A stretch of 56,825 bases of DNA, counting the filler, from Platydemus manokwari (Eukaryota), in NCBI GenBank assembly GCA_037951405.1. It is 5 parts of 5 records of this genome, joined end to end, with 100 filler letters (N's around TTAATTAATTAA, not from the genome) between each part and the next. Parts side by side here need not be neighbours in the genome. Positions count along the whole stretch, not along the records: positions 19,779 to 29,190 come from JBBMOY011253096.1; 4 more parts are not named here. One strand, written 5' to 3'. Shown here piece by piece: positions 19,779-29,190 of the stretch (within the stretch, counting starts at the first letter, position 1; the number at the start of each line of letters is the position of its first letter). The position numbers were made by a program, and so were the translations under genes. The notes below the pieces were generated by a model that was given only the letters and a program-made list of their open reading frames with translations, was not told the DNA's origin and ran no database searches.

Positions 19779-19823
<45 letters not shown>
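19779..19823. repeat. (TAA)n microsatellite at contig start
   Basis: Direct. Confidence 0.97.
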
Positions 19824-19824
<1 letters not shown>

Positions 19825-20237
19825 CTCAATAGTTTCAAAAAATTGATTTATAACTTCCAATAACTCTACTAAACAAATAACGTCTATCTCAATCGATTTT
19901 CAAATCAACATTATAAAAAAAGAACACAAATCATAACAAATAATTTTTATATAAATACAATCAACCTCGCATAATTAAAGATATTGTGTGGTATAGATTT
20001 TGTTATTTTTATAATGAATTAATCCCAAATAACTGATATATGAATTTACACTTGAAGACCTCATCACAATGATCTCTCTAATATATTTTAAGAATATCAT
20101 AAATGTTGAAAACTCCTTCAATCATAATACAAAAATCACCAAAAAATATATAATATTCACAACAATTTCAAACGAATATTCAGATAAATGAAGCGATATT
20201 GGCAAAATTGTTTTTATACTTATTCTAACAATGTTTA

Positions 20238-20681
20238 CCGTATTTTCGGGACTATAAGGCACATCTTAAAAAATGAACTTTTTGTAAAAAATTTTCATAA
20301 ATAAGGCGAAATCCTAACAATGAGTTGACTGATTAATATAATAAATTAAAAACATATAACAACGTTTAATGCTCATCATCATCTAAAATGTCACGTTCAC
20401 TTACACTAACAGCATCTTTTTACATACCATTTTTATTTCGCGGCTGCTGCCGGATTCTCTATTTTAAACAAGAATACACTAAATAGATTTCATATAACGT
20501 GTTTTCTTAATTAAAATCACATTTCTATACTTTTTAAAAATATATCCATTACTTAGTAATCAAAGATTTATAAATGTTATGAAAAATAATTTAATACACA
20601 AAGCACATTGGATAATAAGACATTCAATAGAATTTAACTAAAAATCTGTTTTAAGGCTCGCCTTATGGTGCGGAAAAACGG
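20238..20681. mobile_element. Non-autonomous Tc1/mariner (Tc2/Kanga-type) MITE, 444 bp
   Basis: TA at 20236-37 and 20682-83. Left TIR CCGTATTTTCGGGACTATAAGGC; right TIR (revcomp) CCGTTTTTCCGCACCATAAGGC. Subterminal ATAAGGCG / ATAAGAC repeats are present. Confidence 0.75.
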
Positions 20682-20807
20682 TATATTGGGCAAAATTCGT
20701 GTATATGTGCAAGTGTATTTTACAGATCACAATTGTTTAGGATCGTGCTACATCGATAGAAATAACATGAAAACATCTTTACAAAAATATATTACAACCA
20801 AAATTAT

Positions 20808-23800
20808 TTACTTCACATCTTCCAGAGTAGGATTTAAATTGTAAGCTTTAGCTTTATTTTCATACATTCTACCTAAACTCGGTATATTTTCTTTTTCGTT
20901 AAATGTCTGATGAATCTGTTTGAAGTTTTTACTACCACCTTTATCAGTTAGATATTCGCTTGACATTGTGTCGCGTGAATAATTATTTGATTTAAAGATC
21001 TTTGTTTCTGATGAGGAATTTGCAGATTTTTCCTTTGCCTTCGTAGATGCAGTACAATTATTATCGGCAAGCATTGTTTTTCGAGTTTGTGGTGAGTTTA
21101 TTAATTTAGGTATTTGAGTTCTGCTTTGTTCACTAGAGTGTGAAACCTTCTTTGTACTTTCTGCCATCGGTTTCATTTTGCAAAAATCATTAATATCAAC
21201 AATAGATTCATTTTGATTCATGATTTCCTTGTTAATGGACGTACTTTCTGCAATAGGTTTTCTGTTATTAAAATACTCTTCACTTAAAATATCTAGATTG
21301 AATCCATTATCTGGTTGTTTATTTACAAATAAATTTTCTTTGTTTTTGCTAGTGCTTTCTGCAATAGGCCTCCTTTGATTGAAATCCTCTTGCTTGATTG
21401 TCATTTCAAAATGTTTATTATCGGAATATTTCCTTTCAAATGAGCTCTGTTTATTTATATTCGTACATTTTGCTATTGAATCGATTCTGCCAAAATTCTC
21501 TTGTATAATAGTGTTTTCCATAAAATGATCTTGCTGATTTTTCATTTCAAATGAGTCTGGTTTATTTTTACTTGTGCTTTCTGCGATAGGTTTACGTTTC
21601 TGAAAATCATCCTCTTTGATTGTATCATTAATAAAATTATGTTTTATCGGCATCATTATCGGTAAAGTTTGCTTATCAATTGCCGTACTTTCTGCCATAG
21701 GCCTTTGTTGTTTTAAATCATCTAAATTGACAGTTTTATCAATAAAATTCACATCCTTTCCCATATTTTTCAAAGTATATATTGGAGACTCGTTCGATGA
21801 TTCACAGTTATTTGAAGGCTCTGAAACTTCAATGATTTGAGACAAATCAGATTTCCTTTTATCTTTACTGTCACTTGAGAAAGTTTTTTTCTTTGATAAA
21901 TATTCAGCATCATTTTTGACCAATGAGACTTTACTCATATCTATTTTATTTACAGATTCTGATCTTTCATCTGGTTTACTGCAACTAATATTATCATTTA
22001 TATTTAATTTTTCGTTTTTTGATGTAGATAAAATATTCTCATTATTATGTTTACTAGTTTTTGTTTCTATTTTATTGATATCAGAATTGTCCAATGTGTC
22101 TTGATTAACATTAATCGATGTTTTATTTTTGAATTTTGGTGGATTATCTGGTATTTTAAACACTCCGTCCATTGCAGAACTTTTGGTTGTTGATTCTTTT
22201 TCTGCAGCAAACTTTTCTTTAATGATTTCACTGATTTCGGGTATCAGCTTGGCATCGAGATATTTTTTCAATACATGATTTAACGATGAGAATATATTCT
22301 TATTCAATTCTGCAAAATGACCATTCACCTATTCCCTCACATGTAATTATCGTATAAAAACAACAAACAAACAAAACCAACCCATTTTTCTTCAAATAAT
22401 AAGCTGGAAATCAAATATAAATTAATAAACAAATAATTGAAATAATTATAATTAATGTTGTTTATAAGATAAAAATCAAATAAAAAATTCATATATTTAC
22501 AGTTAAAGATTATATTGCTATGTAATTATAAATAATGCGTAAACATATCGGATATAGGAGAGTTGACTGGAAATTAAAAAGTTATTCCCTTTTCATTAAT
22601 TATAAGGTTTAAAATATTAATTTTTTTTTTAATTTTTTTTTCCAAGCTTTATTTATAAAATAATTTATAATATACAATTAAAATTCAATTAAATAATAAA
22701 TATATTTATTTCAAGACGTAATTGGACAAAATCTTCAATTTTTATTCACCGTGTGATAAATTCTTGGGAAAGTGATTTGTTTTTAAATACCCAATATTTA
22801 ACCGCTAGAAAATGACAAAAATGCAAAGTTTGTTGTGCAGGAGAAAAATGTTTCAAGAAAATGGAAAAATCATAGGCCCGTGTTAAATGTTAATTTCGAA
22901 CCTCTGATTCTCGAATCCATGTAGAATATACAATAATTTGAAAAAATAGATGCTCAATGAACACACATATTTTATCGAGTATATCCAGTAATTTCCGCAT
23001 AAAAATCATCAATATTTGTCAATTAAAAACATTCTCGACTAAAATGGCATTGAAATATCTGACTGGGATAAAGACACAATACAATGGATACCAAGATATT
23101 ATTTCATCAATCGCCAGAATCCAATTTATCAGCTTGACAAAAATATAACAATTTCATGGGATTTCCAATTACAAAACACTAGGAGAATATTGATACTCAA
23201 AAATTGTAAAAAATATATAATACCACATTTAATAGTACCGCAAACTCAAGTACTTGGGGCCTTACATAATACGGGAGAAATTAAGCAGCACTGAGGGCAG
23301 GGCGTGTAGATCTGTGTTTAAGGAAATATCAGCGATGGATGTCAACAAAACAACATTTCCCAAAAATTCCGGTAATGCTTCAATTAGAATAAAAATAACT
23401 ATTGCGCGTCAAGGAGAGTTATGATAAAAATCTCTAATTTGCAATCGACCCAAGATTCCATAGGATATTAAAAAATATATTGACAAATTTTTTCAATTAA
23501 AAATCCCAACCAATAATCATAATATTTATAAAATAAAAATATTAATGAAATTCATCGAACTTAGATTATTGAATAAAAAAGCTTTCGAAAAAACCAAAAA
23601 TATTCAATTAATTAATTAAATTTAATGATACTATTACACACAATTCAAAAAATTAAAAATGCCTAAATGGATTACATTCGCAACATACTCACTTAATTTC
23701 TCGTTCATAATATCCGAATGCTTTCTTAACATCGGGATAATTAGGACCCACCTAAAAAAATAATACGCTTTCAAACATGATTGTTCAAAACGAAAATCAT

Positions 23801-24556
23801 ACAATGTTTTGACAATTGTTCTGGGTTGACGTAAGAGCTTCCTATTTGAGTAAAAATTTGAATTAAAAACAAAATAATCATTTTCAACCTTCGCTGATTT
23901 AACTTTACTCCTATATTTACCACGAAATGTAGTAAATGATGTCTAAATTAATACCCTATTAAAATATTCATCGTGAAACCTTTTATCAAAACTTTAACCT
24001 CAAGCATCCGCTTCACAACCACAAACTGTTCGGTTACGATTGACTGAAGAAATAAAAATGTTTAACTTTTTAAAATTTAGTTATTATTTTATCGATTCAA
24101 AATAGAGTTAAAAATTACAAAATACTTTAAAATTTATTTAAAGAAAACAAATTTAATAAGGACTCACTTTGAATTGTTTTTCTGTCTTCTCGTGCTAGAA
24201 TGTCAATTAATTTATAAACTAATAAAAAAATGTTAACTCACATCTTCAATTTTTTTCACAATTTTGACATTCTCTAAATACAGATCCTAAACGCGTATAT
24301 AATATATGTGAATATAATGAAATGACTATAATTGGTACTTTTTCTCTTTCCTCTATTGTTAGAAATTTGAAGTAAGTTCTACAGTGACTTTTAAAGTCAT
24401 CTCGATATTCTAAATTATTAATGATTCCATTTAAAATAGAATTTCTAAATAAGTACTTAGTTTGAAATAGTTTTCTCTAAACCATTTTATAAATATTTCT
24501 TTGTTTTGTAAATCGGGACATTTAGATAAATTATCTTTTTCAGATTTTGAATCCAT
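20808..24556 (-). CDS. Orphan ~660-aa protein: possible divergent HMG-box-like N-terminus, low-complexity body, 37-aa P[IM]AEST tandem repeats
   Basis: Exons 24556-24457, 24409-24339, 24286-24242, 24194-24168, 24043-23999, 23942-23889, 23841-23803, 23751-23693, 22403-22382 and 22328-20808 have GT-AG borders and splice in frame (MDSKSEKDNLSKCPDLQNKEIFIKWFRENYFKLKYRDDF...EINLLFEEKWVNGHF...). The 1.5-kb open exon is very unlikely by chance in this AT-rich DNA. The 3' end may splice further (35-nt GT-AG candidate near 20811). Confidence 0.8.
21150..21760 (-). repeat. Coding tandem repeat, 111-nt/37-aa period (six motif copies)
   Basis: PMAEST, PIAEST, SIAKCT, PIAEST, PIAEST, PMAEST spaced 37, 37, 37, 37 and 29 aa. 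Confidence 0.92.
22950..23470 (-). mobile_element. Penelope-like RT fragment inside the long intron of the repeat gene
   Basis: Minus strand FVIGNPMKLL (~23145-23175; 'G.PMG'). Lies in the only long (1.3 kb) intron. Confidence 0.3.
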
Positions 24557-25799: not shown

Positions 25800-27220
25800 T
25801 CACTGAAAGTTTGTATTGAAACAAAACTATGACAGAATAAATAATGACATCTCCGACTTCGAGGTGATTTGTAACACGGATTCACATCCGTGCCAAAAGC
25901 TAAATGCCTTTAGAGTGTTTCTACACTATAGATTGCCGTTTCACCTTCGAAATAGAGAAGTCAGTATTCTGTCTCTTTCTTCTCCACACAAGAGGCAAAT
26001 GGTGGTAAGCCCATGGAACTCGGATTCGATGAAAAGATCAGACAGTTAGTTTTAAAAAGTTATAGGAGTTAGCTTTATTCCTTCAACCAATAATGACTTT
26101 TTTATACCTGTTGAAAGTTAGAGGGTCTTTGCCTTATGCCAGCAGAAATTGACTTTTATATTCAGAATATAATAGAATGTTTTCGGTTGTTGAACAACTC
26201 TGACTCTGTCTTTGTTTCTTTCAATCGTTCTGAAGTTGACGAATTTCATAGGTCTCTTGACTGGCTAAATAACACAATTGATGATGAGTGTGCTGGACAG
26301 GGCTCCTGGTGGTAGAGGTGGTTCGGTTGGGGATCCGGGCTCTGCGGAAGAGAGGAATGGATTGTATGTTTGTCTTGCTTGAAGGAGATATATTTGTAAA
26401 GGTTACCTGTAGGGATTCACAATATACGATAGGCAACAAAAAGAAGGATAAATTGTGTTCTGTTCTTCATGATGGATCTGGTTTCTTGAGTTTTATCTCT
26501 TGGACTGAGAAAAAGTGCCAGGGTATATCAGTTAAGACTGTTGTGCTATCTAAAGTTTCAATGGGAGTCTTAGACTCAATTATGTTGTCACCACAGGTTT
26601 GGCACTTCCTTGCCCTGAGTAGAAATAACCTTTTACTGCTGAATTCCCGGCCTTTCCGTGTAATGCAGAGTAAATATTTAAATACCCGTCAATGCGTTAC
26701 TGCAGTGGAATCGACGGTCCACGTACTCAACCATTGTATTGGTAGCCCTTATGAGGCGACCTCTAACCATAATGCAGTATTTGCAATTTTGGGTGAAAGG
26801 CTTATTGCTTTAGGATATAATGTAGCCGTTGACTGCTCCCCAACTGAGGTGAAGACTTCTTTACGTCTTGACTTAATAATCCGAATTTTGGGTAGTAAAA
26901 ACATGAAAAAATATGCTTTTCTCGTTCCACTTGATAAGGAAAAAAGCTTTAAGAATAACATGGAGAGAAACTAGCGAAAGTATGAAGTCCTGGCAGTTCA
27001 AATAGCTAGGCAATCCAGAATTTTAGTGAGCCTGCATATGTTAAACGTAGGTTGTTTAGGATCATGGGATCCACAAAATGATGGAATCTTGAGACGAATA
27101 GGGTTAGATAATAAAATTTCAAACAAGTTGGCTTCACTTCTTGTTTCGACTTCTATCATAGAATCATATATGTTATATAGATCTCACATAGCCAATAAGC
27201 AGCCCTGCCAATATGTCTAA
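25800..27220 (+). mobile_element. RLE-type non-LTR retrotransposon 3' relic (NeSL/Utopia/R2-like)
   Basis: CCHC-like RQCVTAVESTVHVLNHC, then HNAV, LRLDLII (RPD), KYEVLA and VGCLGSWDPQND; ends YRSH...*. In-frame stop after 26971. Confidence 0.85.
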
Positions 27221-28679: not shown

Positions 28680-29190
28680 AACTATACAATGAGAGATGGG
28701 GTTTGCCGAAGCCGAATGACAAAAGACCGAGACCCGGATATAGAGATCTATTGTGACGAAGTAGGTCTTTTTAAAGATCAGGTGTCTAATATACGGATAA
28801 GGAGATTTAGTTTTCCGCAATTTTCACATTTTGCCTGGCCCTAATCAACGGTCAAAAAAGCAAATTTTACGCATCCGTGACGAAATTGAAAAATACGATG
28901 GTGAAGATGAACACATATTGCAAGAGATGGATAATCAAAAAAATCAGGATTGTCTCATTACTTACATTTCAATATTATTACTACACCAATAAAGTTTAAA
29001 AAATTGAAGTATCGTCCAATGGATCATGTTAAAAGAATTGTTTGAGCGCATTCAAGCTTCCGGATTAAAGATAAATTCAGATAAATATTTTTTCTTCAGA
29101 AACGAAATTAAATTTTTGACTAGTGTCATAAGTATAGATGGAGTGAAAATAATCACCGATAAAATTGTTAAAATCACAAATGTCCAAGAA
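28680..29190 (+). mobile_element. Gypsy RT relic truncated by gap
   Basis: ELFERIQASGLKINSDKYFFFRNEIKFLTSVISIDGVK matches the Gypsy RT C-terminal 'RL..AGL.L...KC.F....V.FLG..IS..G' motif. Confidence 0.8.

What the first reader, a model, noticed from the sequence alone, without database searches (positions are those of the whole stretch)
21150..21760. 37-aa tandem repeat presenting six P-[IM]-A-E-S-T motifs: candidate multivalent phospho-docking (polo-box-like) array
Seen: an exact 111-nt period in which a core 'F..T[IV]..[DE]DF..[RK][RK]P[IM]AEST...K' is conserved while spacers diverge; one copy has decayed (SIAKCT). Known: the PLK1 polo-box consensus is [P/F]-[hydrophobic/P]-[hydrophobic/A/Q]-[T/Q/H/M]-S-pT, and repeated phospho-motif arrays (e.g. 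KNL1 MELT) act as tunable signalling scaffolds. P-I/M-A-E-S-T fits every position except -2 (E). Inference: a lineage-specific cell-cycle, kinetochore or meiotic scaffold with a repeat I do not recognise from any named family.
Basis: partly seen in the sequence, partly recalled or inferred. Interest (0 to 1): 0.75.

Follow-up and report, generated by a model that had tools for sequence, protein, structure and literature searches.

The report
Orphan disordered protein with six-motif repeat
A single-copy gene in an AT-rich eukaryotic genome encodes a predicted disordered protein with six tandem copies of a short motif ([RK][RK]-P-I/M-A-E-S-T). Selection is clearly preserving the motif, but no relative, domain or partner could be found, so the proposed polo-box docking role is neither supported nor excluded.

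Summary
On the minus strand, a 506-codon open frame (20808-22328) carries six repeat units at 21138-21779. Five are spaced exactly 111 nt (37 aa) apart; the sixth is 87 nt (29 aa) away. Five cores read P[IM]AEST and one is decayed (SIAKCT). Lag-37 self-identity is 58/174 (z = 13.9).

In the five intact cores, codon positions 1+2 never differ, while position 3 differs in 43% of pairs, close to the spacers (54-56%). These are therefore old duplicates under purifying selection at the protein level.

AlphaFold2 predicts a confident helix at aa 2-45 and no structure across the array, which fits a linear-motif array in a disordered region. Read depth shows the locus is single copy, and a second genome has the same copy number.

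No relatives were found in Pfam, PDB sequences, two word searches, an exhaustive phmmer search of 1.84 billion representatives, the ESM Atlas or a metagenome pattern scan.

The polo-box reading rests on the motif alone. S-T and E at -2 fit PLK1 self-priming. E is not a preferred -2 residue for docking, and +1 is neither Pro nor hydrophobic. KNL1 features are absent. Expression, the full gene model and the binding partner remain unknown.

The parts
20808..22328 (-). 506-codon open frame (stop codon included). It is probably the last, large exon of a multi-exon gene. The first ATG is at codon 53, but codons 1-52 are open and predicted helical.
   Evidence: Single-copy depth of about 12 in run X1, and a colinear contig 20640-23158 with no gaps.
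22194..22325 (-). Predicted long alpha-helix, ORF aa 2-45 (pLDDT 81-90). This is the only confidently structured part.
21669..21779 (-). Repeat unit 1 (37 aa); core PMAEST at 21684-21701.
21558..21668 (-). Repeat unit 2 (37 aa); core PIAEST at 21573-21590.
21447..21557 (-). Repeat unit 3 (37 aa). The core has decayed to SIAKCT at 21462-21479 and the basic pair is lost (ID). The upstream block HFMENTIIQENF is kept.
21336..21446 (-). Repeat unit 4 (37 aa); core PIAEST at 21351-21368.
21225..21335 (-). Repeat unit 5 (37 aa); core PIAEST at 21240-21257.
21138..21224 (-). Repeat unit 6, shortened to 29 aa (8 spacer residues missing); core PMAEST at 21153-21170.
   Evidence: (HMM positions 11-37)

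Best explanation
This is a real, single-copy protein-coding exon of a protein with no detectable relatives. The protein is rich in K, S and N and is predicted to be mostly disordered. Behind an N-terminal helix sit six tandem copies of a two-part short linear motif. Block A is hF...T[IV]..[ED][DN]F. Block B is [RK][RK]-P-[IM]-A-E-S-T-x-x-N-K. The linkers between units are free to vary. The copies are old duplicates whose hexapeptide is held by purifying selection, so each copy most likely serves as a docking site for the same partner. The array would then give multivalent, tunable binding. Because the Thr is invariant, Ser is at -1 and Glu at -2, I infer that binding is switched by phosphorylation from an acid-directed kinase of the PLK1 or MPS1 type. 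Shown here: the reading frame, repeat geometry, selection on the core, predicted disorder, single-copy status and absence of detectable relatives. Inferred: docking function, phospho-regulation and the identity of the reader domain, which is unknown.
For: The open frame has 506 codons in 28.6% GC DNA. The 37-aa periodicity gives z = 13.9. Five intact cores show 0.00 differences at codon positions 1+2 and 0.43 at position 3, against 0.55 and 0.54 in the spacers. The codon table shows CCT/CCG, ATC/ATT/ATG, AGT/AGC and ACG/ACA/ACT in the cores. AlphaFold2 gives pLDDT below 50 and no secondary structure for aa 49-460, which includes the whole array, but pLDDT 81-90 for the aa 2-45 helix in the same run. 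Depth is about 12 across the ORF against 340-590 in a nearby interspersed repeat. A second genome's contig is colinear with no indels. Its four ORF differences (three non-synonymous, one synonymous) all lie outside the cores. E at -2 of the Thr fits the PLK1 consensus [Phi-D/E/N/Q-x-pS/pT-Phi], and S-pS/pT-X is the self-priming polo-docking type (PMC7544505).
Against: There is no evidence of transcription, translation or phosphorylation, because no RNA run was listed. No orthologues were found, so conservation is shown only between paralogous copies within one protein. Single-sequence AlphaFold2 is weak evidence for disorder in a protein without an alignment. The protein libraries searched did not return even this protein itself, so they appear to cover this organism poorly, and 'no relatives' is a weak negative. 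The 5' end of the gene is unresolved.
Confidence: 0.55

Rival explanations
1. One reading: each P-[IM]-A-E-S-T is a polo-box domain docking site (S-pT), self-primed by PLK1. The protein would then be a multivalent PLK1 scaffold in mitosis or meiosis.
For: S at -1 and T at 0 occur in 5 of 6 copies, and T in 6 of 6. E at -2 fits the PLK1 phosphorylation consensus, and S-pS/pT-X is the self-priming docking type (PMC7544505).
Against: E is not among the preferred -2 docking residues (T/Q/H/M). The +1 residue is S/A/K/N, so there is no CDK-primed S-T-P and no hydrophobic +1 for PLK1. There is no S[ST]P anywhere in the ORF. The conserved unit also includes a basic pair, an N-K tail and the upstream block A, none of which a polo-box needs. 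[DENQ]-x-[ST] occurs 30 times in this ORF, so the kinase match carries little information. No binding, phosphorylation or expression data exist.
Confidence: 0.12
2. A highly diverged KNL1/Spc105-type kinetochore scaffold, in which the AEST core stands in for MELT and recruits Bub3-Bub1 when phosphorylated.
For: The overall design is similar: a tandem array in a disordered region, a two-part unit, Thr with Glu at -2, and one decayed copy. KNL1 repeats are known to change consensus quickly, for example to MSLT, MEET and DMSLT (PMC4558858).
Against: There is no M[ED][ILVMF][ST] anywhere and no SILK, and only one RVxF-like site, KDVNF. Residues before the core are basic, not acidic. Only 114 residues follow the last core before the stop codon, with three short low-confidence helices and no room for a coiled coil plus tandem RWD. 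There is no Pfam, PDB or phmmer match.
Confidence: 0.04
3. An array of sites for a different reader, such as a MATH/SPOP-type degron (nonpolar-polar-S-S/T-S/T), an FHA domain, or a domain that does not depend on phosphorylation.
For: AESTS in copies 2, 4 and 5 fits the SPOP-binding consensus as I recall it from Zhuang et al. 2009. Multivalent weak sites are typical of SPOP substrates. Conservation over about 10 residues suggests a reader that contacts more than S-T.
Against: Three of six copies do not fit (ESTA, ESTK, KCTN). P-[IM] and the basic pair are not part of that consensus. pT+3 is not consistent across copies (K/I/N/V), which argues against an FHA domain. Nothing was tested experimentally.
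Confidence: 0.1
4. A precursor protein cut at the dibasic pairs (KR, RR, RK) in front of each core, releasing repeated PIAEST-type peptides.
For: A basic pair immediately precedes 5 of 6 cores. A conserved short peptide with divergent spacers is the classic precursor pattern.
Against: No signal peptide is visible in the exon or in the candidate first exon. No Gly-dibasic amidation or cleavage site follows the core. Conservation straddles the dibasic pair (block A upstream). The protein is long, K/S/N-rich and starts with a 45-residue helix.
Confidence: 0.05
5. The 37-aa units are structural repeats of a folded domain that single-sequence AlphaFold2 cannot see.
For: 37 aa is in the size range of helical repeat families. 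The prediction had no alignment.
Against: No secondary structure at all is predicted across the array, while a helix in the same chain is predicted confidently. The composition is about 60% K/S/N/E/D/T/Q. The conserved positions form a contiguous peptide rather than a periodic hydrophobic pattern, and the sixth unit tolerates an 8-residue deletion.
Confidence: 0.08

Closest known systems
KNL1/Spc105 MELT repeat arrays (Bub3-Bub1 docking)
   Same: Both are tandem arrays of short motif units in a disordered region. Both have a conserved Thr with Glu at -2, a modular unit with an upstream block plus a core, diverging spacers and decayed copies. In both, the consensus is kept by purifying selection within a species (PMC4558858).
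   Different: There is no MELT-like M[ED][ILVMF][ST], and a basic rather than acidic lead-in. This exon has no SILK, no RWD or coiled-coil tail, and no sequence similarity.
Self-priming polo-box docking sites (S-pS/pT-X), such as C. elegans LMN-1 (PMC7544505) and CENP-U/PBIP1 T78 (the latter from memory)
   Same: An S-T dipeptide with an acidic residue at -2, so one kinase could both create and read the site. The site is present in multiple copies.
   Different: E at -2 is not a preferred docking residue, and +1 is not hydrophobic or Pro. Nothing here shows phosphorylation or binding.
Multivalent SPOP-binding consensus arrays (nonpolar-polar-S-S/T-S/T; from memory, Zhuang et al. 2009)
   Same: AESTS occurs in three copies, and multivalency in a disordered region is shared.
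   Different: Half the copies do not fit, and the conserved flanks are unexplained.
Prohormone or neuropeptide precursors
   Same: Repeated conserved short peptides after dibasic pairs, with divergent spacers.
   Different: No signal peptide and no C-terminal processing or amidation site. Conservation crosses the dibasic pair, and the protein is long and lysine-rich.

Membership tests
PLK1 polo-box docking motif | Ser at -1 and Thr/Ser at 0 (S-pS/pT core) | tested here: met
   S-T in 5 of 6 copies; C-T in the decayed copy; T in 6 of 6.
   E in 5 copies and K in 1.
PLK1 polo-box docking motif | Priming context: Pro at +1 (CDK, non-self-priming), or the PLK1 consensus D/E/N/Q at -2 with a hydrophobic +1 (self-priming) | tested here: inconclusive
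   No Pro at +1 and no S[ST]P in the ORF. E at -2 fits, but +1 is S/A/N/K and not hydrophobic (consensus from PMC7544505).
PLK1 polo-box docking motif | Phospho-dependent binding to a polo-box domain | not testable with these tools
   No multimer prediction, no phosphoproteome and no RNA run was available.
KNL1/Spc105 | MELT-like repeats M[ED][ILVMF][ST] or known variants with Met at -3 | tested here: not met
   The regex scan finds none. The core has Ala at -3 and I/M at -4.
KNL1/Spc105 | N-terminal PP1 motifs SILK and RVSF | tested here: inconclusive
   No SILK, and one RVxF-like KDVNF at aa 191. The true N-terminal exons are unknown.
KNL1/Spc105 | C-terminal coiled coil plus tandem RWD domain | tested here: not met
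   The stop codon comes 114 aa after the last core. Only three short helices at pLDDT 45-58 are predicted there. There is no Pfam hit. The GTGAAG at the last codons is a weak donor.
SPOP-binding consensus array | nonpolar-polar-S-S/T-S/T | tested here: inconclusive
   Three of six copies (AESTS) fit. The consensus is taken from memory.
Any Pfam family or solved structure | A significant profile or sequence match | tested here: not met
   Pfam gives 0 families at E <= 10 for the whole ORF, and only sub-threshold noise for pieces. PDB sequences give 0.

The most novel reading that the evidence does not exclude
The protein is a lineage-specific mitotic or meiotic phospho-scaffold. Its six E-S-T cores would be written by PLK1 or an MPS1-like kinase and read by a polo-box or Bub3-type domain. 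That would be an independently evolved counterpart of the KNL1 MELT array with a new motif grammar: a basic pair, P-Phi-A-E-S-T, and an upstream F...TI..EDF block.
Probability: 0.1. Interest if true: 0.6.

Novelty: new variant of a known kind. Interest (0 to 1): 0.3.

Why it matters
Tandem arrays of short linear motifs in disordered proteins are a known way to build tunable, multivalent signalling platforms. This array has an unrecognised motif, and selection on it can be read directly from the codons: positions 1+2 are frozen while position 3 is as diverged as the spacers. The six-residue core together with the upstream block gives a defined peptide for pull-down experiments. If the partner proves to be a mitotic reader domain, this would be a case of convergent evolution of a KNL1-like design. 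As it stands, it is an uncharacterised gene with a clean repeat and no functional anchor.

Tried and rejected
- **Tandem Repeats Finder:** no array at score >= 30, because the units are too diverged in DNA.
- **Family and structure-sequence scans:** Pfam on the whole ORF, the array alone, the N-terminal helix, the C-terminal 30/50/120 aa and five candidate upstream stretches gave only sub-threshold noise. PDB sequence search found nothing.
- **Homologue searches:** the word search of 5.8 billion proteins with the whole ORF, and again restricted to aa 184-397 at E <= 10, found nothing. Exhaustive phmmer against 1.84 billion representatives found nothing. The ESM Atlas gave no usable hit.
- **Metagenome pattern scan:** a search for two cores 76-106 nt apart returned four loci. 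All match only the hexapeptide forced by the pattern and score at noise level against the repeat HMM.
- **Literature:** searches for PIAEST, PMAEST and KPIAES returned nothing relevant.
- **Shugoshin idea:** the C-terminal 'AYNLNPTL' loosely recalls the Y-x-E-P-x-L of the Shugoshin C-terminal box. I rejected it because there is no Pfam hit and the spacing is off by one on both sides.
- **Further copies:** no further copies or other periodicities exist outside aa 184-397 or elsewhere in the piece.
- **RNA genes:** Rfam and tRNA scans of the piece found nothing.
- **Spliced gene model:** Candidate upstream exons were examined one at a time only, and their phases do not connect cleanly to the large exon.

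Full report
**What is there**

About 8% of random codons in this composition would be stops, so such a frame cannot arise by chance.

The first ATG is at codon 53. Codons 1-52 are also open, and AlphaFold2 folds them into a confident helix (aa 2-45, pLDDT 81-90). The frame is therefore most likely the large last exon of a spliced gene. Two acceptor-like sites sit at its 5' end: aatag|GTGAATGG at 22329/22328 and ttttgcag|AATTG near 22310.

Small exon-like stretches with good GT/AG borders lie upstream on the same strand, between 24556 and 23692. The first begins with an ATG at 24556 (MDSKSEKDNL...). I could not connect their phases cleanly to the large exon. Taken one at a time they match no Pfam family. 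The ORF ends in TAA, and the GTGAAG overlapping its last codons is only a weak donor.

**The repeat**

Core hexapeptides start at ORF aa 210, 247, 284, 321, 358 and 387. That is four intervals of exactly 111 nt and a last one of 87 nt (independently, family D2).

The six units are:
- YTLKNMGKDVNFIDKTVNLDDLKQQRPMAESTAIDKQ
- TLPIMMPIKHNFINDTIKEDDFQKRKPIAESTSKNKP
- DSFEMKNQQDHFMENTIIQENFGRIDSIAKCTNINKQ
- SSFERKYSDNKHFEMTIKQEDFNQRRPIAESTSKNKE
- NLFVNKQPDNGFNLDILSEEYFNNRKPIAESTSINKE
- a shortened sixth unit...NQNESIVDINDFCKMKPMAESTKKVSH

The unit has two conserved blocks. Block A is hF...T[IV]..[ED][DN]F. Block B is [RK][RK]P[IM]AEST..NK. About 11 variable residues lie between units. Copy 3 keeps block A but has lost the basic pair and three of the six core residues, each by a single-base change.

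Identity at lag 37 is 58 of 174, against 12 +/- 3.3 in shuffles (z = 13.9). No other lag exceeds 18. There are no further copies in the ORF or in any frame of the piece, and no other periodicity.

**Selection**

The units are only 41-61% identical in DNA, which is why TRF misses them. Among the five intact cores, codon positions 1 and 2 never differ (0.00). Position 3 differs in 43% of pairwise comparisons, using CCT/CCG, ATC/ATT/ATG, AGT/AGC and ACG/ACA/ACT.

The spacers differ by 0.55 at positions 1+2 and 0.54 at position 3. The silent sites of the core are thus nearly as diverged as the spacers, while the replacement sites are frozen. This is the signature of old duplicates with purifying selection on the peptide. 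It does not fit recent duplication or gene conversion.

**Second genome**

The only run that holds the stretch (X1, organism coded) consists of genomic contigs. Depth is about 12 across the ORF, against 340-590 at 20175-20570, so the gene is single copy and not part of a mobile element.

One contig covers 20640-23158 colinearly with no gaps, so the copy number is the same. Four differences fall in the ORF: A427S, S375Y, I369V and a silent change at K148. None touches a core. This is too few to say more than that the protein evolves fast.

**Structure**

Single-sequence AlphaFold2 gives a mean pLDDT of 42. Residues 49-460, including the whole array, are below 50 with no secondary structure. Three short low-confidence helices lie near the C-terminus.

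The composition is K 13%, S 12%, N 12%, E 8% and D 7%. The conserved positions form contiguous peptides, and the sixth unit tolerates an 8-residue deletion. Together these features point to a linear-motif array in a disordered region rather than a folded repeat domain. A single-sequence model is weak evidence on its own.

**Relatives**

None were found:
- Pfam: 0 families at E <= 10.
- PDB sequences: 0.
- Word search of 5.8 billion proteins: 0. Repeated on aa 184-397 alone at E <= 10: 0.
- Exhaustive phmmer of 1.84 billion representatives: 0 at E <= 0.001.
- ESM Atlas: nothing usable.
- Metagenome scan for two cores at the right spacing: four loci, all chance matches.

Neither word search returned the protein itself. 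That suggests these collections cover this organism and its kin poorly, so 'orphan' means 'no relative in what I could search'.

**The interpretation**

S at -1 and T at 0 form the S-pT core. E at -2 fits the PLK1 phosphorylation consensus Phi-[D/E/N/Q]-x-pS/pT-Phi. S-pS/pT-X is the self-priming docking type (PMC7544505).

Three points count against it. E is not a preferred -2 docking residue. The +1 residue is S/A/N/K, neither Pro nor hydrophobic, and there is no S[ST]P anywhere in the ORF. [DENQ]-x-[ST] occurs 30 times in this ORF, so the kinase match carries little information. The conserved unit is also much larger than a polo-box needs.

The same core fits other grammars about as well. 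AESTS in three copies matches the SPOP-binding consensus as I recall it. The basic pair in front of each core resembles a prohormone cleavage site, although no signal peptide or downstream processing site is visible.

This exon has no MELT-like motif and no SILK, and only one RVxF-like site. Just 114 residues follow the last core. It resembles KNL1 in design only, not in membership.

**Verdict**

The most defensible mechanism is a multivalent array of docking sites for one unknown partner, probably switched by phosphorylation of the invariant Thr (confidence about 0.55 for the generic statement). The polo-box reading is one of several untested specific versions (about 0.12). Expression could not be assessed because no RNA run was listed.

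The interest is modest. It is a clean example of a selected linear-motif array with a motif no library recognises, but there is no functional anchor.

Noticed in passing
window 20175-20570: In genomic run X1, summed contig depth jumps to 340-590 here, against about 12 in the flanks. Many contigs break or join here. This is a high-copy interspersed repeat about 250 nt downstream of the ORF's stop codon.
   Followed up: partly
window 29008-29190 (+): An open stretch running into the piece's edge (...LKINSDKYFFFRNEIKFL...GVKI...) gives a weak RVT_1 match to the end of the reverse-transcriptase profile (E = 0.01, below the cut-off). It is probably a retroelement fragment.
   Followed up: partly
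window 26288-26971 (+): A 228-aa open frame with no Pfam or PDB match. From memory, its ...VHVLNHC...NHNAV...GYNV...RLDLII... stretch resembles the restriction-like endonuclease region of R2-type non-LTR retrotransposons. This is unverified.
   Followed up: partly
window 24556-23692 (-): A run of small exon-like open stretches with GT/AG borders and introns of about 50 nt. It starts at an ATG (MDSKSEKDNL...; then YRDDFKSHCRTYFKFLTIEEREK; SIVTEQFVVVKRMLE; VGPNYPDVKKAFGYYEREIK). It could be the 5' part of the same gene or a neighbouring gene. None has a family match.
   Followed up: partly
window 23129-23303: Run X1 holds two contig versions here. One is identical to the window; the other has 9 substitutions and 7 inserted bases. 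This is a polymorphic or heterozygous non-coding stretch.
   Followed up: no
window 19779-19824: A perfect (TAA)15 microsatellite at the edge of the piece.
   Followed up: no
ORF aa 162-167 and aa 330, 479 (window about 21828-21845; 21339-21341 region; 20892-20894 region): LSQIIE fits the PP2A-B56 LxxIxE pattern, and there are two KEN triplets. Both are expected fairly often by chance in this K/N/E/I-rich composition, so they are leads only.
   Followed up: no
L002:622-740 (metagenome contig Ga0123339_10011192, 27% GC): An unrelated 18-aa tandem repeat (...VKPIAETTVPTEQIVTPV...), picked up by chance through the core pattern.
   Followed up: no
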